The notes beneath the pieces were generated by a model. The model was not told the origin of the DNA and ran no database searches. It saw nothing but the letters and a program-made list of their open reading frames with translations. From positions 4,216,001 to 4,280,000 of the forward strand of contig OU015568.1 in NCBI GenBank assembly GCA_907165135.1: 64,000 nucleotides of DNA. Reading direction: 5' to 3'. Source of the DNA: Oikopleura dioica. Lineage: Eukaryota; Animalia; Chordata. This document shows, one piece after another, positions 7,104 through 60,725 of this stretch. The translations under genes were made by a program, and so were the position numbers. Numbering within the stretch: the stretch's first letter is position 1; each line of letters begins with the position of its first letter.

Positions 7104-9581
7104 TCAATATTTCTCAAGAATCCAACTCGCCATTTTTTCATTGTCTGTTCTTGTCACGACGATTGGAAGATATCCGTCGCAGTCTTTGTCGAATCCAGCG
7201 ACGATTCCGTGAAGGTACCAGCCTTCTTCTTTGCCCATATAGCACATTAATGGTCCACCATTATCGTAATTGCACTAAGAAAAAGAAAGATTGAGACCTT
7301 GTCAGATTGGCAATCTGAGATTGCCCAGAAACTTACATGCTTGAAATCTGGATCATCATTTGAGTAAGTGCTCGTGTAGCAGTCCATTTCTTCTGACCAT
7401 TCATATTCAACTAGGATAAGCAATACAGAACTGCTAAGAAATCATTTTTTATTCATTACCGAAATTTGAGCTCTCAACCATTATATTCTTGATAACACTT
7501 TGACATTGAGCTGAATCGAGTCGCTATAAAATAATTTAAGTGTTGTTATACTGACCTAGGAGTTCCGACTTAGCACTCCGAAGATAGGAGTCAAAATATT
7601 GACAAACCTGAACAGTTCCATATGAGTTTCTCCGCTCTCCGTCTCGTCCTTGAAAGCCGACAGTCACACATCTGTAGGCTTCTGGCAAGGCCCATCCAAC
7701 GTGTCCAAATCGGACAGGTTTCACATATTCAGTAAATTGGAATGATTCGAAGGTTCGGAGAACACCGATGTTATTCTCGCCCGTTTTCTGACTAAATAAC
7801 TGTAATTTACTATCAATAATATTACCTCACTTGTATTCAGGATGATAGTATCGTCTCTCTAGAATTTTGACATCCCAAGCATCCCTGTCATCAGTCTGGA
7901 AATCGTTAACACCTCCGACTGCTGCATCTGCAGTTGACAGTCCTGCGAATATCTTCCTTGCACAAAAGCCGGATGTCAAAATGTTTCTGCTTGAAATGAG
8001 CACACCCGAGCACATAATCTTCGTTTGCTTATTATCTGTTATGAGAATTGACCAGGGGAAAACATCGATTTCAAGGCTGTTACTTTCTCCGATTATCTTC
8101 GGGCTTCTTGTTTTGTTGATGCTATAGAATGGACAGATGCCTTCATTTCGAGACAAGCACATCCACTGACCCTGGTGCTCAAAGCCAAAGAAATTTGATG
8201 TGACATTGACTAAAGATGGTGCAGCCGGGCTTTCGGTAGGATGGTTGGCGCTGGCTGAAAATTCGTCGAAAGTTGGTTCCGGTCTATACTCGATTCGAGT
8301 TGGAGGAGTTGGAAAGCATTTAATGTTGCAGCCTAAACAAGGATTCTCAGTTGTTGTTTCTGTGGTAGTGGTTGTTGTTGTCGTTGTTATGGTCGTCGTA
8401 GTGGAAGTGGTAATTGTTGTCGTGGTTGTTGTCGTCGTAGTAGTTGTTGAAGTTGTCGTTGTCGTTGTGGTAGTGGTAGTTCTTGTTGTAGTGGTTGTTG
8501 TTGATGTTGTCGTCGTCGTAGAGGTAGTTGTAGTTGTGGTTGTCGTAGTCGTCGTGGTAGGAGTTGTTGTTGTCGTAGTTGATGTTGTGGTTGCTGTTGT
8601 TGTCGTCGTCGTAGTGATAGTTGTAGTTATGGTTGTCGTAGTCGTTGTGGTTGAAGTAGTGGTAGTGGTAGTCGTTGTGGTCGTAGTGGTTGTTGTTGTA
8701 GTTGCTGTTGTGGTTGTCGTAGTCGTTGTCGTACTGGAGGTGGTTGTTGTAGTTGTCGTAGTCGTCGTGGTTGTCGTAATAGCAGTGGTAGTTATTGTTG
8801 TCGTAGTCGTCGTGGTTGTCGTAATAGCAGTGGTAGTTATTGTTGTCGTAGTGGTTGTTGTTGTAGTTGTGGTCGTTGTTGGAGGCGCTGTTGTACTGAT
8901 GCAGTCAGGCAACTTGCTATCTAAGCTTGGACACCAAACACAATCCTTTTCTCTTGAGCACTCCTGAAAGGTCGCGTAAAAGCTCAAGGTTGGACATGCC
9001 CGTCGATTATCACAATTTTCTCCAGGACAGTTATGTTCGTGATAGAAACACCAAGGAGTATCACGATATAATCGTGAAACTGGCTGGTAACAACAATTGT
9101 TCGCCAAGCATTCAGCTTCAGTTGTTCCATAATAGCCACAGTCGACTTTATCCTCGTTTACAGCTGTGCATTCGCTGCTTGCTAAATCACAATCGTCATT
9201 GTTTTTTGGTCGCTCGATGCATTGATATTCTTTTTCAGACGTTGCGCAGAATAAACATCCTTCTCTAGTACATTCCTCGGGCCTTACATGAAGGTGCTCC
9301 TCAGCGGTGAATTTTTTGCAGGGTTTTCTGCAGCCTTCTTCTGATGAGGGACACTGTGACTTTCCGTAAAAAGTTTCCGGTTGGAAACACCATGGTTCAT
9401 GGCTATTTTGTCCCCATTCTGACCAGCAGCAACCGGCATTAAGACAATCGTGTTCATTATCCTTGTGACAGTTTCTCAAATTATGAGTTGTTTCTACAGC
9501 ACATTGAGCCTTCCTGTCATCTCTACAGAAATTTCCAGCTAAAACGCTTTCAAAAACTAGTAAAACTAAAGTTGCTCTCAT
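7104..9581 (-). CDS. Secreted trefoil (P-domain) + Thr-rich mucin + catalytically dead trypsin-like domain protein
   Basis: Signal peptide MRATLVLLVFESVLAG. Trefoil-type motifs CLNAGCCW..PWCF and DCGYYGTTEAECLANNCCY..PWCF. Long Thr tract. Protease-fold motifs CSGVLIS..ILTSGFC, ENNIGVL and CNYDNGGPLMC, spliced to the stop at 7104-7106. Confidence 0.9.
8350..8880 (-). repeat. Coding poly-Thr (ACN)n mucin tract
   Basis: Degenerate gtt/gtc/gta/gtg triplets on the + strand, with mixed third positions as expected for a coding repeat. Encodes roughly 175 mostly Thr residues. Confidence 0.95.
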
Positions 9582-46769: not shown

Positions 46770-48420
46770 ATGAACGTTTTTCCCTGCGCCTTGACAAACA
46801 TAAATGCTGACAAAAGAGAGGAACGGCAAAGAGCGAAAATAGGTACTAGTGAAATTCTAGAAAAAAAGAAAGGAAATTTAAGGGGATCGAATTTACAAAT
46901 ACTCTGATGATGGAAGCTCGGCGCTAGAATTTAATGTTTCTGGAGAGCGATTTCGCGTGAATCGAAATCTTCTAGAGATGTTGCCAGAAAGCACTCTTGG
47001 GAACTTTTATAAAAGAGAAGTTTATTTCGACGCGAAAAGAAACGAGTACTTTTTGGATCGGCATAAAAAGACGTTTGAAGCAATCATTGATTTTTATTAT
47101 TCGAATCATTACAAGATCAGGATTCAACAATTGAAAAAGGCTCCATTTTCCATCAGCAATCCTCTGAAAGTCTCAAGGTCTTCTGCGCCCAAATGACATT
47201 CCACTGGATATTTTCATCGAAGAACTTCGATTCTATGATCTTCCGATTCCGATCATCCTTGATTTCCTCAAGTCAGAAGGGATTGATGTCATCGACATCA
47301 CTTACAAAGGAAAACCGTGGAACTATCATGTTTGGCAGTTTTTGGAAAGCCCTCGCTATTCAAAAAAGAGCTCGATTCTGCATCACTTTAATACTGTAAT
47401 GATAATCGGTAAGAAGCCCCTCTGTTCTTCCGAATTAATTTTTAGCTTCGATTTTCATCTTCTGCGTGGAGACACTCCCACCTCTGATCCAACAAGCTGA
47501 TGATAACTGTACAAAGGTTCGTGGTGGTTTTTCATAATCGCGCTCCAACCGCACTCTTAAATTTGTGTAAGATCACTGATCAGGATTGCTGATCCTTTTT
47601 TCAGGAATCGAAATGCTCCCCAGAAGATTTATTTGAACAGAAAATTGTCTCAAGTGAAAGCTTTTACAATCAGCTACCGAACTCAGTAATATTCAAAATA
47701 CAGTCAAAAGCTCTTTTGAAGAGTTGCTTATTATGCTTTCTTATTCGACGTTGTTTCGTCCATCTATTTTGGTTTGGAGCTTTTCGTCCGATTCAACTGC
47801 TGCGATGATAGATACGTCTTCATTTGCGACCCTTTCAATATTTTTGACTTCGTTGATTTCACCATTTTTTCACTGTACTTCGCCACTCGATTGTTGGCGA
47901 TTCAACAACATGGACCTGGAAGGCACTTTTTGATTGCTCTTATGCACAAAACAAGGTAAAGCATTCCCTGCTCTCTTTTTTCATCTCCAGACTTTTATGC
48001 ATTGCCCGACTTTTGAAACTCTGCCGTCATTCGCGAGGACTCCGGCTTCTTTCGGCAACGATTATGCACTCGAAATTCATGCTCTTCCAACTTGTCGTTC
48101 TTCAACTTATTTTCGCGATCATTTTCGGCAGCTTCATTTATTACTCTGAAATGGACGTCCCAAATAGTAGATTCGACAATATTCCAATTTCCGCTTATTG
48201 GGCGCTTTTTACAATGAACACGATGGGATATGAAGATTTTGTTCCTCAAACGACATTTGGCAGATGTCTTGGTTCACTGTGCACCATTGTTGGCTTGTTT
48301 TGTATTTCATTTCCTGTCCCAGTCATTGTATCTCATTTCGCTTATCTGTATAAGAGAGATAAAGCGGGAAGAGGGGTCAACGCGCTGCTGATTTTGAACG
48401 ACTCGTATAGAATAAAATAA
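46770..48420 (+). CDS. Divergent Shaker/Kv1-like voltage-gated channel subunit
   Basis: T1 domain FNVSGERF..RNEYFLDR..RPNDIPLDIFIEELRFY; S1 IFCVETLP; S2 LELFVRF; S4 RLLCIARLLKLCRHSRGL; pore YWALFTMNTMGYEDFVP; S6 FPVPVIVSHF. Confidence 0.9.
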
Positions 48421-50901: not shown

Positions 50902-53076
50902 ATGACACAAGAGACCGTTGTTTTAGCTTATTCTGGCGGTCTTGATACGAGCTGCATTCTCGTTTATTTGGTGAAGCAAGGGTACAGAGTTGTTGCTTGT
51001 ATTGCTGATGTTGGTCAAGGTAGGATAAGATGAGCTTCCTCGGCGCTAGAGATGGATTAAGGATATAGCCGTTCTCAAGGCACTTTCGTAGCGCCGAAAT
51101 GGGGCGATAAAATTTTTTCATTCTAAGACAGGTCCTACCTAAAATTATGTCTAGAATTCGATTGTGATGTTTTTTAAAATTTTTTTTCAAAGAAAATTTC
51201 TCTCTGGAGCGATTTGAAATCTTACGATCACTTTTTCTCGAAATCTTTCAATTAAATCGCTAAAACTAAACCGTGTATTATTATAAATAACTGCTAATCT
51301 ATCTTCCTAGGGCCTTAAAATCTCAAAACCCGAGCAAATTTTAATTCTAGCGTCTTCTTCTTTTTGGCTTTTCTTTTTCAAAAATACTGCGTTCAGGGCG
51401 CTCGACCAATCAGCGCGCTCTTTCACATGCCCGCCTCACCGCGCGATGGAGGAGAGCGCTCAGCGCAGCAAACCAGAGCGCTGTCTGACGCTTCGGCTCA
51501 CTCAAGTAAGCCTCATAAAAATGGCTGTAGAATCATAAATATTTAGAATTTTTTAAAATTTAGGCCCTAGGAATGTAGATAAAGGTCCAAATTTTTAATT
51601 TATCAAAAAAACTCGACCGATTTAATGGAAAATTTTCGAGAAAAAGTGATCGCAAGATTTAAAATTCCTCTAGAGAGAAATTTTTCCATTAAAAAATTAA
51701 AAAGAACACTAGAATCGGGTTTCTAAGGCAATTTTAGGTAGGGTTCCTTTTGAAGTGAAAAAATTTTATCGTCCCCTTTTGGCGCTACGAAAGTGCCTTG
51801 AGAACGGCTATATCCTTAAGATGAGGACTTCGAAAGAGCGAAAGAAAAGGCAATGAGCATTGGCGCTTCCGCCATCTACGTCGAAGATGTCAAGGAAGAA
51901 TTCGTTACGGACTTCATCTGGCCGTGGGTAAAGTCAGGAGCAATTTATGAGGAACAGTACTTGCTGGGGACGAGTCTTGCTCGACCGCTAATTTCCAAGG
52001 CGCTGGTTAAAGTTGCAAGACTGGAAAATGCCCAATATATTTCGCACGGAGCTACTGGCAAGGTATCTTTGTTTGTATCAATAACTAATGATTTCTGATA
52101 AGGGAAATGATCAAGTCCGATTTGAATTGTCAATCGCTGCCCTCGCCCCCGACATCAAAATCATCGCTCCTTGGCGCGATGCCGAATTTTGCGCCAAATT
52201 TGCTGGTCGAAATGACCTCTTCAATTTCGCTGAAGAGAACAATATCCCTCTTCCTGTCTCGAAATCGTCTCCTTGGTCGATGGACGCAAATCTGATGCAC
52301 ATTTCTTATGAAGCCGGAATTCTCGAGGTGAGTCTTTCTTGATTTCAAAAAGAGAAACGAGCGTTCAGGACCCAAATGTTTCTCCTCCTGATCGAATGTG
52401 GCTGATGACAAAAGATCCCGTCAACGCTCCCGATGCTCCTGAATTCATCGAATTGGTGTTCGAAAAAGGACTTCCGGTCATGATGAAATACAGGGAAACG
52501 GAAGTTTCAGCGCCGCTAGAGCTGTTCAAAAAGCTCAATGAAATTGCAGGAGAACACGGAATCGGAAGACTTGACATCATCGAATCAAGATTTGTCGGAA
52601 TGAAATCACGTGGTTGCTATGAAACTCCCGCTGGGACTGTTTTGCTCACTGCTCATAAAGGTTTGTTTAATAAAAACTCTGGAATAAATGTCGACCGTAG
52701 ATCTGGAATCGCTAACAACTGATCGAGAAGTTATCCGATTGAAGCAAAACCTTGGGCGAGAATTTTCCGTTCAAGTTTACAACGGAATGTGGAACTCGCC
52801 CGAGGCCCAATTTACGAGACAAGCGATCGATCATTCTCAGCAATTTGTCAATGGTTCCGTCAAATTGCAGCTCTACAAAGGATTTGTCCGAGTTGTTACA
52901 AGAAATTCGAAGACGAGCGTCTATGATGCTACTTTGGCGTCGATGGATGAGCTGACAGGTTAGTCTAGTTCTCTCGCTTTTGATATCAAAAGTGAATTTT
53001 AGATTATAACCCGGCTGATGCAGAGGGCTTCATCAGAATCAATGCTTTACGATTGAAGCAACATGCGAAACGTTGA
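50902..53076 (+). CDS. ASS1: Argininosuccinate synthase
   Basis: [86 protein letters not shown]. Confidence 0.97.
51061..51815. mobile_element. 755-bp TTAA-flanked MITE (Kolobok-like) in ASS1 intron 1
   Basis: TIR GGATATAGCCGTTCTCAAGGCACTTTCGTAGCGCC is perfect for ~35 bp, then imperfect for ~270 bp. TTAA at 51057-60 and 51816-19; GG..CC termini. Confidence 0.92.
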
Positions 53077-53095
53077 ACATCTATTGAACCATGAT

Positions 53096-53305
53096 TGTGG
53101 ATGCATAATATCTCGATTATCAGCGCTTGTCTGCTAGCGCACGCCTCCACACCGATAAGCTCAACCGGGGAGCCTTTCTGTTCATTCTGTTCACTCTATG
53201 TCTTACCGAGCCACAGCATTTACTTTGAAATAAAACAACAATATTGAGACATTACAACTTGACCACTCCTTGCAGCCCAGAGATCAGATTTTATCCACTG
53301 TTACA
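53096..53305 (+). repeat. 5' LTR
   Basis: TGTGGATGC...CTGTTACA, with AATAAA at 53229-53234. Confidence 0.95.
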
Positions 53306-54009
53306 AAGTGGTGACAAAGGTATGTTTTACCCATTTGTTTTCGGAGATTTTTGAGAGATCTGTGAGAGAGAGATCATCATTTTTAAATATTGAAAGTCTA
53401 TTTTTGAGAAATTGTTTTTCAATAATCAATTTTGGTAATTTCATTTACACCAGTGAAAAGGGAGATCGGGGAAAATCATCTGAAGCGAATAAATCAACTT
53501 TGATTCTCGAATGCAAATATGAATAAAAATCTGAAATAAAATTGAATGGCTCTTTTATAATACCGGTAATGTTTTCTTCTTTTCTATAATCTAAAACGAA
53601 AAACTCTTTATATAGAGTTCCAGAAGCTACAGTCATTTTTATTCTAAATACAATCTATCATTTTGCCTGTAAGACCAATTTCATTGGCAAAAGGCTCAAA
53701 GACCAACAAACTTGGCAAACTATTTTTATCTTTTTATGATTTTGAATCCATCTTATCATTATTTAAATGTAGCAAATTTCATTATTCCTTTTATGTTTAA
53801 TTAGTAAACTTCTAAAAATGTGATTTTTCAAAAAATTTTTCTGAAGAATTTCAAAAGTGCATAAAATAAGACAGACGATAAGCAATCGCGTCATAGATAA
53901 AGTGTCGTTCTCACGCGAAAGGGGTCAGACGTTGAGACATTTATGTTTGGGAGACGGGGAGACTCTAGAGCCAAAATGACTCATCGAGATGACGCATATC
54001 AACGAATAA

Positions 54010-54190
54010 GAATCTAGTAAAGGAGAATAAATCGAATGAGAATATTTTTTCAAGAAACTGGCCAATAAGAATCTGACCAATAAGAATCTGACCAATGAGA
54101 ATGTGGCAAATGAGAATATGACTTATGAGAATCTGGCGAATGAGAATCAAGCTTCAAAAATAAATGAGAATCAAGTTGTTGAGAATCGAG
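54010..54190 (+). repeat. Degenerate 15-bp minisatellite (aatRagaatctgRcc) in the LTR-element leader
   Basis: About 10 imperfect copies of aataagaat/aatgagaat. Confidence 0.7.
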
Positions 54191-54890
54191 ACATAAGTCT
54201 TTTAATAAAATATTTTTCTTCAATAGCAATTATTTTTCCAATTAAATGTTTTGAGGCATTAAATTCATATAAATTTTGATTAAGAATGATTTTCTATTCT
54301 CTTTAAACTTAAATATGGGCTCTGGGGAATAACAACTTGTGATGAAGATGAAGTAACGAACGCATAATTATATTTTTATTTTTCTTTAATATAAATGGTC
54401 GAAATTCATTGTGGACATTTAAGAATATTTTTTTTTTCATGTTTCCGAAATAATATATCGCTGATTGGTGGAGATTTCTGAGCGTAAATGGAATTGTCAA
54501 AATACGGGGGAATGAATTTGATAAAGCTTTTTGTAAACTCTGGCCAGTATTTCTACAATCATTTTTTTCAAATAATCATTTTTCTTAACATACACGTGTA
54601 TATTTTTGAGTGAGTGAAGGTGATGAAACGGAGTTTTGAGATGCAATGAGGAGTGAGAGTGACCTTGAGGGTCGATCAAAAAAATTTTTTTTTAATCAAG
54701 TATTGGTGTGGGGCGCGGGGAGTGGTTTAGTTTTTTTTTTGAATTTTTTATCTGGGTTAATTCTTTGAAGAAAAAATAGCAGGGGCTATGAGACTCGGTG
54801 GAGATTATTCGAAAGAAAAATTATTTTGATCATTAAATTTTCATAAAAGTTTTATTCAAGAAATATTATTTATATTTTTATTTATTTCAG

Positions 54891-56111
54891 ATGACCGGAC
54901 TTGTCAAACGTTATGTCAGAATGGAGACAGCAACTCTACCATATTTAAGATGGTTGGGGAAAAAGCATGAGATTTCGGGATATGATTATTTGAATAAAGA
55001 CATGCTGCTCAGAGAGCTCGAGAAGCTCAACATCGGGAATTCTTTTTTAATAACTTATGTTGAAGGCAGTCAGGGAAAGCCGCATTTAATTCCTATCACG
55101 GGTCTGACAAAGATTGGGGATGAGGAGATTCAGTACGCGTTTGATGAAGCGAAGCGTAGATTCATTTCGGGGGAAGATCATGAGCTTTTTCGATTTGATG
55201 ATAAGAGTATTCGTAAGGGTGATTACGGAACGTCAAATGAATCTTCGAGGGCTGTTATGTTTGAATTTTATTCGAATCAGAGGGCATTCGATAAATTTAG
55301 ATGCAAGCGAGTAAGTTTTTCAAGGGAAATTGGAGGAAGTTCAAATGAGAATTCACTTGCTAAGATCGATGATAGAATGGCAGCTTTAAGGGTTGAACTT
55401 GCAAAGATCGAAGATATGAAAAGACAAATTATGGCGGATATAAAAATTCAGGAAGATTTACGTGATTTTTGTGCTCGAGGGTGCCGTGCAAGAGAAGTGA
55501 TTCGGGAATCGAATGGTGATTCGTCCGAGAATGGAGTTGTGAAAGAGGGTATCGAGGGAAATGATCAAATTATTGCGCAGTGTCCTCCATGGGATTATTC
55601 ATATAAACTCAAACTGCCTGTTCTTTTTACTGATGAGACTGACGGGGAAAACAAATTTACAGATGTCAATTCCTGGTTTACCAGCATAACGTTCCTTATG
55701 GATTTGCAAAATATCACTTCGAGAAAGTCAAGACTAGCAAACTTGCTAGCAAACATTGGTGGTTCGCATCAGGGAATGGTGACGAAGGCGTTGAAATTGA
55801 AGGAAAACCCGACTGAGGATGATGTATTGAGTGAATTATTGAAAATTTTGAATTACAATAAAAGTTTTATTGAGCACGAAATCGAGAAATTTCAGATCGA
55901 CAGTAAGAAACAATTGATGACGCAATTTCATGCGTTACGAAATATGGTTGTACTCTTATATGAGAAAACGGCTTTAGGGAAAAATCATGAAATAACAATT
56001 GATCAGATAACATTGCGGGAGTTTAAAGCGAAACTTCCGAAACTAGTTTCAGGAAATATTATTTTTCGACTGGGAATCGAAAATAAAAAGCCGTTAGAAA
56101 TCGTCGAATAA
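54891..56111 (+). CDS. Gag-like protein (406 aa) of the LTR element
   Basis: Single long ORF inside the LTRs. The C-terminal half has capsid-like spacing (LPVLF..D...W+..+..L...; L..LL..L..; F..KLP). Central coiled coil; no zinc knuckle. Confidence 0.72.
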   Translation: MTGLVKRYVRMETATLPYLRWLGKKHEISGYDYLNKDMLLRELEKLNIGNSFLITYVEGSQGKPHLIPITGLTKIGDEEIQYAFDEAKRRFISGEDHELFRFDDKSIRKGDYGTSNESSRAVMFEFYSNQRAFDKFRCKRVSFSREIGGSSNENSLAKIDDRMAALRVELAKIEDMKRQIMADIKIQEDLRDFCARGCRAREVIRESNGDSSENGVVKEGIEGNDQIIAQCPPWDYSYKLKLPVLFTDETDGENKFTDVNSWFTSITFLMDLQNITSRKSRLANLLANIGGSHQGMVTKALKLKENPTEDDVLSELLKILNYNKSFIEHEIEKFQIDSKKQLMTQFHALRNMVVLLYEKTALGKNHEITIDQITLREFKAKLPKLVSGNIIFRLGIENKKPLEIVE

Positions 56112-56305
56112 GCGCAAAAATACTCGATTGTGCATAGGATCATTTGAACAAGTTTGAAGTTATAAGAAAATCAGCGTTACGATAATTGGGTTGTTTTCAT
56201 AAATTTTATCAGTTGACTATTTTAAATGTTTTTCTTTTGACGATTAAATGAAATGAAAAGACGGGTTGAATGAGGGTTAAATTAATATTTATTTAGTGAA
56301 TTATT

Positions 56306-56611
56306 ATGACGATTGGCGATTACAGAACCGATATTGAAAGATCAAAGCTGCTCGACCTTCCATATTTTCTTGAAATAGCCCTTTATGGAGCTTCTTGTTT
56401 TCGTTCAAGATGGGCGACAATGGAAGTCAATCAATTCGATATTCAGATTGTAAAAAGAGCCCTACAAATATTGTCGAATCCTTATTGGGTCAATGAAGTT
56501 CGGACGTTAGAAACGAGTGACGGGGAATTAGCTGTTGATACGGCTATTATGCTTGATGCGTTTTTTTTAATACATGGAAGAATACGAAATTCCGAGGGAC
56601 ACATTTTATGA
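56306..56611 (+). CDS. Accessory ORF of the LTR element (101 aa; frame stays open ~56 codons past the TGA)
   Basis: ORF preceded by an AT tract and atttag acceptor (ends 56296). The in-frame continuation LKSLKLGKRD..CEKGA* runs to ~56782. Confidence 0.5.
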   Translation: MTIGDYRTDIERSKLLDLPYFLEIALYGASCFRSRWATMEVNQFDIQIVKRALQILSNPYWVNEVRTLETSDGELAVDTAIMLDAFFLIHGRIRNSEGHIL

Positions 56612-57103
56612 TTAAAGTCGCTGAAACTGGGTAAGAGGGACATATCTTCTATGAATTTTCGGGCTCTAGATCTTATGTATGAGGGATTTTACGAGAACTT
56701 TAAATTTGAAACAAGGGAAAAATCGCATTTTCAAATGTTTAAGGAGGCGAGGGGCAGTTCAATATGCGAAAAAGGGGCTTAAACATCATCGAATAAAAAT
56801 GCGATGTTTGGATTATTTGGGAAGAAATATGGCTCTGTTGTTATCCAATTTGCTTCTGCTGGAATTAATTCTTTTCAATGGATTGACGATTTTCTGATAT
56901 CCTTTTGGCGCTGCGTGCTTTACGAAAATATCGACATTCAAATTGGTTGTTATTTATCGACGTTTATTTGCTCATGGTGCTATCTTTATCTGGACAGTCG
57001 TAATGGTTTGGATTTATGATGATGCTTGCTTTGGCTTTATTTATTTACTGGATTTGGATTGCGAGGCATGATTAACGACAAAAATTTGAGGGGAGGAAGG
57101 GTT

Positions 57104-57313
57104 TGTGGATGCATAATATCTCGATTATCAGCGCTTGTCTGCTAGCGCACGCCTCCACACCGATAAGCTCAACCGGGGAGCCTTTCTGTTCATTCTGTTC
57201 ACTCTATGTCTTACCGAGCCACAGCATTTACTTTGAAATAAAACAACAATATTGAGACATTACAACTTGACCACTCCTTGCAGCCCAGAGATCAGATTTT
57301 ATCCACTGTTACA
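57104..57313 (+). repeat. 3' LTR
   Basis: Same sequence as 53096-53305, preceded by the polypurine tract. Confidence 0.95.
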
Positions 57314-57502
57314 ATGATAATAAACTTTGAAGAAAAAAGGGACTTTGAGCTTGAAAACAAAAGGAAAGCCAAGTTTACGAGCATGATGTAAAAAGCTGTC
57401 AGAAAATATGTAATTTGTCCATTTTTTCTTGTTTTATGGCGAGAAGGGAAAACGGCTCGCGTACTTAACATTGATCTAAGGTTATCGTTAATAATTTGCG
57501 AG

Positions 57503-58922: not shown

Positions 58923-60725
58923 ATGAGTCAAATAAGCAAATCAGCGCCTCTTTTAGCCAGAAAAAGAGATAGCAAGGGCGAAGATCAGAATGAAGAAGAA
59001 GGAACCAAGTCCTCTGGGAATAAATGGAGCATTTTGTTCCTACTTGCTGTTTCTCTTGCAAGGAACAGTTTAAATGCATCGTTTTGTTATTAAAGATAAA
59101 GAAATAGTAGCAACTCAGAAAAGGGTTGCCATGGGGATTTTCAACTCGATAACTGGACCTACTCTTCCCGTTCTAGCGCAGGAAAGAGGAGATTAATATC
59201 ATTAGAATCTTGACTTCTTGGTGATATTCTCATTAAAGCATGTCTGTAAATCACCAACCACCGTCAGTTGGATATTCTCCGGCCGATCCGTTGGATTCCT
59301 CATCGGCTCAGGGCAGGGCTCCTTTGTGATAAGAGCTTATCACTAGGAAAGCGCCTTCAAGACTGGATGGCCGAGCGGTCTAAGGCGTTGGATTAAGGCT
59401 CCAATCTCTTCGGGGGCGTGGGTTCGAATCCCACTTCAGTCAAACCTTTTTGAAGATTCTAGAGCCCGAACAAGCACTTTCCTCCGTCTTCGACCGTTTT
59501 GGGATTTCTCAAATGCTCATGCTCTCTATCAGCGTTTTGCTGTGCGCAGTTGGCTTGGCCTTGATGCCGATTTTGACGGATCTTTGGCTCTTGATCATTA
59601 TTGTGACGATGACGGGAATTATTGCTGGATACATTGATGCAGCGATTCAGTGCATTATGTTGAAAGTCTGGGGAGCAAAGAAATCGGCGTCGATTTTGCA
59701 GCTTCATCATTTTACCTTTTCTATCGGTGCTTTTCTCTCTCCGATTTTAGGTAAATAAAGGCCTTAGCAGATGATTTTAATCAATTATTCTAGTGACACC
59801 ATTCTACAGCGGCGACGATGATGTTTGCGTCGACGATACTGATGACAACAACGACCCAGTATGCATTGGAATAGGCGACAATAATGCAATTTTGACCCCA
59901 TTTCTCATCTCTGCTGGTTTCATCGCGGCTGTTTTCGGTCTGATGATTTGGCTGTATTTTGTCGACATCACGGAGAAAATCAAGGAAGACAATCAAGAAT
60001 CCGCGGATGAACGAAAAGAAGATGCTCTTGGTGATTTATGGCATTACTTTATCCCCGTGATCGTTTTCTACTTCTGCATTGTTTCTGGTGAAAATGTTTA
60101 TCAGTCGAATATCTTTTCGGTAAGAAACATGACCTTGTCTCATTTCATAAAGAAAAACTCAGTATGCTGCGTGTAAAGTCGGATGGGACAGTCGGAACGC
60201 TTCGATTCTCAATTCGATCTTTTGGGCTGGATTCGGAATTGGCCGGGGATCAGGAATTTTCTTCAGGTGGAATTTTTTTCTTTCAAAAATAATATTTTAT
60301 TAAGCCGTCTTTTACGACCAAGAACATACATCCTCATCGACCTGTTAATTTGCGCTCTAACGGCAACTTTTCTCTCAATTTTCCCCACTAACGAAATCAT
60401 GCTCTGGATTGGCTCCTTCACTTACGGCCTTGGAATCGCAACACTGTACTCTTGCGGAATCAGTTACAGTCACGAGCTGACGAATGTCTCGGGAAAGTGG
60501 ATAGTCGTTTTTGGAATTGGAAATGCCATCGGAGCAATGTCGATGCCGATCGTTGGAACGGCTCTTGTGTTTGACTCCGGAAGTCCAGAATCGCTGATGT
60601 ATCTTCTCGCCGGTCTTACAGGGCTGAACATTCTGGCGTTTGGTGGAATGCATCTTTTGGGGACTGTTTTTGGTCCTTTGCCAAAGCTGCTCAGAAAAAC
60701 CGCGGAAAAAGAATCTTCATTTTAG
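58923..60725 (+). CDS. MFS transporter, MFSD4/NAGLT1-like
   Basis: GIFNSITGPTLPVLA, VSWIFSGRSVGFLIGS, GIIAGYIDAA, LHHFTFSIGAFLSPIL, ILNSIFWAGFGIGRGSGIF, GNAIGAMSMPIVG; 12-TM pattern. Confidence 0.88.
59361..59442 (+). tRNA. tRNA-Leu (AAG)
   Basis: GACTGGA/TTCAGTC acceptor stem, D-arm TGGCCGAGCGGTCTAAGGC, anticodon loop ATTAAGG, long variable arm, GGTTCGAATCC T-loop, and a T-run terminator at ~59447. Confidence 0.96.

What the first reader, a model, noticed from the sequence alone, without database searches (positions are those of the whole stretch)
53096..57313. Freshly inserted Gag-only LTR retroelement carrying orphan accessory ORFs and no pol
Seen: matching 210-bp LTRs, a 5-bp TSD, PBS and PPT, a 406-aa ORF and several short ORFs, with no protease, RT, RNase H or integrase motifs anywhere inside. 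Known: Gag-only non-autonomous LTR elements (TR-GAG type) are described in plants, while Oikopleura Tor elements are autonomous gypsy-type elements. Inference: this is an active parasite that supplies its own capsid, borrows Pol from a helper, and carries unexplained cargo ORFs. It may be an undescribed element class in this lineage.
Basis: partly seen in the sequence, partly recalled or inferred. Interest (0 to 1): 0.82.

Follow-up and report, generated by a model that had tools for sequence, protein, structure and literature searches.

The report
Gag-only defective LTR retrotransposon, recent insertion
A 4.2-kb LTR retrotransposon that keeps only a shortened capsid (Gag) gene and one small conserved extra gene sits just after a host gene's stop codon; it is a recently inserted, non-autonomous offshoot of an Oikopleura-type gag-pol element family, which is a known kind of parasite rather than a new class.

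Summary
There are two 210-bp, 100% identical TG..CA LTRs, a 5-bp ATGAT target duplication, a TGG-type PBS-like site, a 14-nt purine tract and a 406-aa ORF. No pol is present.

The ORF is a Gag. It aligns end to end (31% identity, E 1e-64) with the first 452 residues of a 571-aa Oikopleura dioica protein that ends in two CCHC knuckles. A metagenomic relative has the same Gag followed directly by a retropepsin. The window's Gag lacks the whole nucleocapsid part, and nothing downstream resembles NC or protease.

A second insertion with the same deleted architecture but a different flank appears in three marine metagenomes, so the deleted form itself has spread. Between the two copies gag has dN/dS 0.18. 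A 101-aa downstream ORF is open and constrained in both despite dS 0.5. The sharp identity mosaic points to recombination between lineages.

An AG|ATG acceptor-like junction at the gag start is kept in 5 of 6 diverged lineages. This hints at spliced or SL trans-spliced expression.

The insertion lies between the stop codon and the poly(A) signal of argininosuccinate synthase.

Verdict: a TR-GAG-like, semi-autonomous derivative. It is a new variant of a known kind. Trans-mobilisation and the helper element are inferred, not shown.

The parts
53091..53095 (+). Left copy of the 5-bp target-site duplication (ATGAT)
   Evidence: Sequence read; same pentamer directly after the 3' LTR.
53096..53305 (+). 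5' LTR, 210 bp, TG..CA, with AATAAA at 53229-53234
   Evidence: Identical to the 3' LTR at 210 of 210 bases.
53309..53320 (+). PBS-like site beginning TGG, 3 nt after the LTR; cognate tRNA not identified
   Evidence: Only 7 contiguous matches to the window's tRNA-Leu-AAG 3' end.
53320..54890 (+). Candidate leader intron or outron (GTATGT at its start, T-rich tract plus CAG at its end). It lies within a 1585-nt leader that holds 33 ATGs and no supported ORF.
   Evidence: The acceptor-like AG|ATG junction is conserved in relatives. Splicing itself is inferred.
54053..54148 (+). 15-nt tandem array in the leader (6.4 copies; looser copies span 54002-54190)
   Evidence: Function unknown.
54891..56111 (+). 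gag, 406 aa, uninterrupted but lacking the nucleocapsid-coding part (one truncating loss). Sub-regions: HeH/SAP-like motif about 54915-55031, long helix about 55344-55517, CA-like helical domain about 55605-56108.
   Evidence: dN/dS is 0.18 against the second copy.
56306..56611 (+). ORF101, an orphan accessory ORF that is open and constrained in both known copies
   Evidence: No Pfam family and no relatives beyond the sister locus.
56612..57087 (+). 3' internal region with short hydrophobic ORFs of unknown origin. Its last 300 nt are 95% identical to the second copy.
   Evidence: No family hit.
57088..57101 (+). Polypurine tract (14 purines), 2 nt before the 3' LTR
57104..57313 (+). 3' LTR, 210 bp
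   Evidence: The LTR of the second locus ends at the same base, then its flank diverges.
57314..57318 (+). Right copy of the target-site duplication (ATGAT)
51853..53076 (+). Neighbour: last exons of a host argininosuccinate synthase gene. Its stop codon is at 53074-53076, 19 nt before the insertion point.
   Evidence: Pfam on separate exon ORFs and frame translations. The exons were not joined.
57319..57324 (+). Neighbour: AATAAA directly after the TSD, the likely original poly(A) signal of the host gene
   Evidence: Its function is inferred.

Best explanation
This is a non-autonomous ('semi-autonomous') LTR retrotransposon. It descends from a gag-pol element family of Oikopleura-type appendicularians, through loss of everything between the end of the capsid domain of gag and a roughly 1-kb 3' segment. 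It keeps the cis parts needed for reverse transcription and integration: LTRs, a PBS-like site and a PPT. It also keeps a Gag made of an HeH-like N-terminal motif, a long helix and a CA-like helical domain but no zinc-knuckle NC, plus one small conserved ORF. Shown: the anatomy; Gag homology; absence of NC and pol; a second insertion of the same deleted form; purifying selection on gag and ORF101; a mosaic identity pattern; and the position in the host 3' UTR. Inferred: (1) RT, integrase, protease and NC-bearing Gag come in trans from a related autonomous element, and the mosaic arose by template switching between co-packaged RNAs. (2) The NC-less Gag co-assembles with helper Gag. (3) gag, and perhaps ORF101, are translated from RNA processed at the conserved AG acceptor. 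That processing would remove the 33-AUG leader, while unprocessed RNA serves as the template. (4) Host argininosuccinate synthase transcripts now end at the LTR's AATAAA.
For: Anatomy. Gag identity: ORF406 residues 2-406 align to residues 4-452 of P0020 (CBY39583.1, O. dioica, 571 aa) at E 1e-64. P0020 has CCHC knuckles at 515-531 and 546-566 that match retroviral NC structures at E 4e-6. Relative L007 has the HeH part, a CA part 45% identical to ORF406, two knuckles (38.7 bits) and then a retropepsin (34.1 bits). An AF2 model of residues 235-406 (pLDDT 67.8) has the PNMA2 capsid, the Copia capsid and the MOAP1 CA-like domain among its top Foldseek hits. Loss of NC and pol. Spread of the deleted form: L001, L005 and L006 are one second locus (99.8-99.9% identical including the flank), with the same gag-ORF101-LTR layout and a flank absent from the window. 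Selection: gag has 10 synonymous against 7 nonsynonymous differences, omega 0.18, binomial P 6.5e-4. ORF101 has omega 0.41 at dS 0.51, and 0 of 20000 neutral simulations were as conserved. Mosaic: 98.5% identity in gag, 71-83% in the centre, 95-98% at the 3' end. Acceptor: AG|ATG after a T-rich tract in 5 of 6 lineages. O. dioica trans-splice sites are unpaired AG sites usually followed by A (PMC6389100).
Against: No helper element sharing the LTR ends or PBS was found. Scans of viral and metagenome contigs with the LTR, the PBS junction and Gag patterns gave nothing. Only two insertion loci are known, and the 5' half of the second is unseen. The CA-fold match is below significance (best E 0.06, TM 0.35) and the viral fold library gave only noise. 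The source organism of the window was not established directly. A Gag without NC may not function in particle formation at all. No RNA data were available, so the splicing and poly(A) statements are untested. Henriet et al. found gag and pol transcripts of tested Tor elements starting in the 5' LTR and do not mention trans-splicing.
Confidence: 0.7

Rival explanations
1. The NC-less Gag is kept not to build the element's own particles but as an interfering or modulating factor. On this view a Gag fragment co-assembles with, and biases or inhibits, particles of related autonomous elements, as Gag-derived restriction factors do. The element persists because of that effect.
For: The nucleocapsid part is entirely missing while the rest is under purifying selection. 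The best fold matches are NC-less, Gag-derived host proteins, PNMA2 and MOAP1.
Against: The ORF sits inside a mobile unit with identical LTRs and a TSD, and the unit itself has spread. That is expected of a parasite and not of a host defence gene. Nothing here tests interference.
Confidence: 0.15
2. It is a dead-end defective provirus: a one-off internal deletion of an autonomous copy, with no replicating non-autonomous lineage. The short ORFs would then be chance products.
For: Internal deletion is the simplest origin. Only two loci are known. No relative of ORF101 exists outside the sister locus.
Against: Both loci carry the same deleted layout but lie at different sites, so the deletion predates at least one transposition. 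Gag and ORF101 show constraint between copies. The mosaic of 98% and 71-83% segments needs at least two diverged lineages of this form.
Confidence: 0.08
3. Assembly artefact or segmental duplication: the identical repeats and the second copy would reflect collapsed or duplicated sequence rather than retrotransposition.
For: Perfect LTR identity is also what a collapsed repeat would give.
Against: A clean 5-bp duplication flanks TG..CA ends, with a PBS-like site and a PPT in the canonical places. Three independent metagenome assemblies reproduce the gag-to-3'-LTR structure and the same LTR end.
Confidence: 0.02

Closest known systems
TR-GAG elements of plants (non-autonomous LTR retrotransposons that retain a GAG ORF and lack the enzymes; described as 'semi-autonomous' in PMC13570524)
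   Same: LTRs, a PBS-like site, a PPT, a single gag-derived ORF, no pol, and propagation of the pol-less form.
   Different: The host is an animal (appendicularian-type). The Gag lacks its nucleocapsid knuckles. There is a second conserved small ORF, a 1.6-kb AUG-rich leader, and an acceptor-like site abutting the start codon.
Tor elements (Ty3/gypsy Oikopleura retrotransposons; PMC4402516)
   Same: Lineage: the closest named Gag relative is an O. dioica protein. Both are LTR retroelements with recent, polymorphic insertions and near-identical copies. A gag-protease order is seen in relative L007.
   Different: Tor elements carry pol and often env, and are classified by Pol phylogeny. This element has neither, so membership cannot be tested that way. 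I did not compare it with any Tor sequence.
Deletion-derived defective proviruses mobilised in trans, such as mouse ETn with MusD (own knowledge, not tested here)
   Same: A non-autonomous LTR element family that depends on a related coding-competent family.
   Different: ETn has lost essentially all coding capacity. Here a constrained Gag fragment and an extra ORF are retained.
PNMA2, MOAP1 and Copia capsid structures (PDB 8rb3, 8uyo, 7lgc, 8vvw)
   Same: Top structural matches of the C-terminal helical domain model. PNMA-type proteins are likewise Gag-derived CA proteins without NC.
   Different: The matches are weak (E 0.06-1.3, TM 0.29-0.35). PNMA and MOAP1 are domesticated host genes and are not inside LTRs.

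Membership tests
LTR retrotransposon (structural definition) | Direct long terminal repeats with TG..CA ends | tested here: met
   210 bp, 210 of 210 identical.
LTR retrotransposon (structural definition) | Short target-site duplication | tested here: met
   ATGAT on both sides.
LTR retrotransposon (structural definition) | PBS complementary to a tRNA 3' end next to the 5' LTR | tested here: inconclusive
   A TGG-initiated 12-mer lies 3 nt after the LTR. Only 7 contiguous matches to the single tRNA available. The host tRNA set was not available.
LTR retrotransposon (structural definition) | Polypurine tract next to the 3' LTR | tested here: met
   14 purines at 57088-57101.
Autonomous Ty3/gypsy-type element | pol with protease, RT, RNase H and integrase | tested here: not met
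   No Pfam hit in any + strand segment. No tblastn match to the NC or PR of relatives. There is not enough room for pol.
Retroelement Gag | Homology to a Gag that carries CCHC nucleocapsid knuckles and precedes a retropepsin | tested here: met
   P0020; L007.
Retroelement Gag | Own CCHC nucleocapsid domain | tested here: not met
   ORF406 stops at the equivalent of residue 452 of 571 in P0020. There is no knuckle in the ORF or downstream.
Retroelement Gag | Two-lobed all-helical CA fold | tested here: inconclusive
   AF2 pLDDT 67.8. The Foldseek top hits are the PNMA2, Copia and MOAP1 capsid domains, but with E 0.06 or worse and TM 0.35 or less. No PDB sequence hit.
TR-GAG type non-autonomous element | Retains a GAG ORF, lacks the enzymes, and the family propagates | tested here: met
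   As in the rows above, plus a second insertion of the same form. The definition is taken from PMC13570524.
Tor family (Oikopleura) | Placement in the Tor clades by Pol phylogeny | not testable with these tools
   The element has no pol.
HeH / SAP / Rho_N-type motif | Helix-extended-helix motif recognised by family profiles | tested here: inconclusive
   AF2 is confident only for residues 11-50, with two short helices. The family profile retrieves multi-Rho_N proteins at E about 1e-5. Rho_N scores E 0.0035 in P0002, below the curated cut-off.

The most novel reading that the evidence does not exclude
The element family uses the host's splicing machinery to separate messenger from template. 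An acceptor abutting the gag AUG, conserved in 5 of 6 lineages, and a similar site just upstream of ORF101 would let SL trans-splicing (or cis-splicing from the GTATGT next to the PBS) resolve the transcript into translatable gag and ORF101 mRNAs, much like an Oikopleura operon. Only unprocessed RNA would keep R-U5-PBS and so be copied. Together with an NC-less Gag and a constrained orphan ORF, this would be a two-gene, semi-autonomous chordate retroelement with a lineage-specific mode of expression.
Probability: 0.25. Interest if true: 0.65.

Novelty: new variant of a known kind. Interest (0 to 1): 0.45.

Why it matters
Oikopleura-type genomes are extremely compact and carry few retroelement families. 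A pol-less derivative that keeps a selected, nucleocapsid-free Gag and an orphan ORF shows that parasites of parasites persist even there. It also offers a natural case for asking what a Gag without NC is selected for. The conserved acceptor at the gag start links retroelement expression to the host's unusual RNA processing, and this can be checked in existing transcript maps. For annotation, the locus should be masked as a transposon. The argininosuccinate synthase gene next to it should be flagged as having its 3' UTR interrupted between the stop codon and the poly(A) signal.

Tried and rejected
- **Family scans of ORF406, its C-terminal part and all other + strand segments:** Pfam gave only sub-threshold noise such as DIX, UBA_6 and ZPR1.
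- **PDB sequence searches:** the ORF and the family profiles gave nothing.
- **First AF2 run:** full length with 3 sequences gave pLDDT 41, unusable except for residues 11-50.
- **Viral fold library:** noise only.
- **Profile search of 1.84 billion representatives:** 11 hits, all short metagenome pieces. It missed the O. dioica protein that later aligned at E 1e-64, so absence in that library is weak evidence.
- **Locus scans:** the nine-sequence alignment was too divergent for the locus scan. The two metagenome scans and one viral scan, with Gag patterns, an LTR 22-mer and the LTR-PBS junction, found nothing.
- **Contexts of P0005, P0003, P0006, P0007 and P0004:** too short or without DNA.
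- **Remnants of NC or protease after the ORF:** none found.
- **ORF101 as a decayed protease:** rejected. There is no family hit and its Asp-containing stretch is not conserved in the sister copy.
- **TCTAGA male-promoter motifs:** 2 in the element, as expected by chance.
- **Bacterial promoter and terminator scan:** uninformative.
- **Exact look-up of a host ORF to name the organism:** not on record.
Full report
**1. Observation**

The repeat finder returns a single long direct repeat, 100% identical. Reading both ends places 210-bp LTRs at 53096-53305 and 57104-57313. They begin TG and end CA, and each is bounded by ATGAT. An LTR probe occurs nowhere else in the 64 kb, and BLAST of the element against the rest of the window finds nothing.

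A TGG-initiated 12-mer lies 3 nt inside the 5' LTR, and a 14-purine run ends 2 nt before the 3' LTR. Each LTR holds one AATAAA. The 406-aa ORF is the only long ORF.

**2. What the ORF is**

Pfam and PDB sequence searches are blank.

The word search found a 98% identical 415-aa protein and a 45% identical partial relative, both from marine metagenomes. The profile search of 1.84 billion representatives added only nine short or distant hits. One of these, P0005, carries a CCHC knuckle after the homologous region.

Looking up an N-terminal relative gave contig L007. In it, the HeH-like N-terminal part is followed by a CA part 45% identical to ORF406. Then come two zinc knuckles (38.7 bits) and a retropepsin (gag-asp_proteas 34.1 bits, RVP_2 23.6 bits).

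Searching with that Gag returned P0020, which is CBY39583.1, 'unnamed protein product [Oikopleura dioica]', 571 aa. ORF406 residues 2-406 align to its residues 4-452 at E 1e-64. P0020 ends in two knuckles that match retroviral nucleocapsid structures at E 4e-6.

So ORF406 is a Gag that lacks roughly the last 115 residues of the full-length form, including all knuckles.

Counting breaks:
- gag has one truncating loss and is otherwise uninterrupted.
- pol is absent altogether.
- No env is detectable.
- Nothing after the ORF resembles NC or protease, so the loss is a rearrangement and not just an early stop.

Among relatives:
- L002 has one in-frame stop.
- L004 and L007/L008 each have their N-terminal and CA parts in different frames, one change each. 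Whether this is an intron or a frameshift is undecided.

**3. Fold**

With three sequences AF2 was poor, pLDDT 41. Only residues 11-50 were confident. They form two short helices, consistent with the HeH/SAP/Rho_N-like signal seen in profile hits.

Residues 235-406 with six sequences gave pLDDT 67.8. Foldseek against the PDB ranks the PNMA2 capsid first (E 0.06, probability 0.98, TM 0.35), then a second PNMA2 entry and the Copia capsid, with the MOAP1 CA-like domain at rank 11. This is suggestive of a retroelement CA fold but it is not significant. The viral library gave noise.

**4. Copies and selection**

L001, L005 and L006, from three samples, are one locus: they are 99.8-99.9% identical including the flank. 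This locus has the same layout as the window from 135 nt upstream of gag to the LTR end. It then has a different flank that is absent from the window. The pol-less form therefore inserted at two sites or more.

Identity between the two copies is a sharp mosaic:

| Region | Identity |
|---|---|
| Leader end | 99.3% |
| gag | 98.5% |
| Next spacer | 71.5% |
| ORF101 | 83% |
| Second spacer | 80%, with a large gap |
| 3' region | 94.7% |
| LTR | 97.6% |

The synonymous divergence of gag is only 0.04, against 0.51 in ORF101. The divergent centre is therefore not relaxed selection. It indicates recombination between diverged lineages.

gag has omega 0.18 (P 6.5e-4). ORF101 is open in both copies with omega 0.41. 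None of 20000 neutral simulations kept it as conserved, and a 101-aa ORF arises in 0.4% of shuffles of that region. ORF101 has no family and no other relatives. The remaining short ORFs have no support.

**5. Expression signals**

These are inferred. The 1585-nt leader holds 33 ATGs. GTATGT overlaps the end of the PBS-like site, and a T-rich tract plus CAG abuts the gag ATG.

The AG|ATG junction after a T-rich tract recurs in 5 of 6 lineages whose upstream DNA is otherwise barely alignable. In O. dioica, SL trans-splice sites are unpaired AG sites usually followed by A, and 39% of genes are trans-spliced (PMC6389100). A similar Y-rich AG lies a few bases upstream of the ORF101 start in both copies.

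**6. Host context**

Exon ORFs scanned one by one are argininosuccinate synthase. The exons were not joined. The last exon ends at 53074-53076. The insertion is 19 nt further on, and AATAAA follows the right-hand duplication at 57319-57324. The element thus separates the host stop codon from its likely poly(A) signal, in the same orientation. The exon ORFs abut or overlap, so the introns must be tiny.

**7. Lineage**

An appendicularian, probably Oikopleura, is inferred from three things: the O. dioica Gag relative, near-identical copies in Tara Oceans marine metagenomes, and the tiny introns.

**8. Comparison and novelty**

The element fits the TR-GAG concept (PMC13570524), which is so far a plant term, and it resembles trans-mobilised defective proviruses. 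It differs in having an NC-less Gag, the constrained ORF101 and the acceptor at the start codon. Tor membership is defined on Pol and cannot be tested here.

**9. Steps left out, and a slip**

The named O. dioica relative sits on an 8.6-kb contig that may hold a whole retrovirus-like element of an animal. Before that name came back I had looked up ten short contigs of unnamed relatives, each 2.7 kb or less.

BLAST tables show hit bounds only, and no residue path was kept. One search printed natural upstream DNA of two relatives as it stands. Consensus lines printed by the alignment tools were not used.

Noticed in passing
window 48223-48336 (+), within 48013-48420: Rfam potassium-channel RNA editing signal (K_chan_RES, 67.5 bits against a gathering score of 51) inside an exon-like ORF that matches Ion_trans. 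This looks like a conserved A-to-I editing site element in a K-channel gene.
   Followed up: no
window 59361-59442 (+): tRNA-Leu(AAG) gene 2 kb downstream of the insertion. Its 3' end shares only 7 contiguous bases with the PBS-like site.
   Followed up: partly
window 7827-9581 (-) and 8001-9000: A 584-aa single ORF with a Trefoil domain. The same kilobase has an extreme GC skew of 0.38 and an AT skew of -0.35, which suggests a biased, repeat-like coding region.
   Followed up: no
window 54002-54190: Degenerate 15-nt tandem array in the element's leader. It would read as a pentapeptide repeat, but there is no supported ORF and its role is unknown.
   Followed up: partly
window 56112-56800 against L001: The centre of the element is 17-29% diverged from the sister copy while both sides are 1-5% diverged. 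This is a recombination-like mosaic with abrupt borders.
   Followed up: partly
search result, versus 78-79: The exhaustive profile search of representatives did not return the O. dioica Gag, which aligns to the query at E 1e-64 pairwise. A blank from that library should not be read as absence of relatives.
   Followed up: no
window 59793-60725 (+): Exon-like ORFs with a weak DHHC palmitoyltransferase match and an MFS transporter match lie just after the tRNA gene. Gene spacing is very tight across the window.
   Followed up: no
L007 90-160 and L009 640-700: Two diverged relatives share a short conserved leader motif about 100 nt upstream of the gag start. The window has no clear equivalent.
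   Followed up: no
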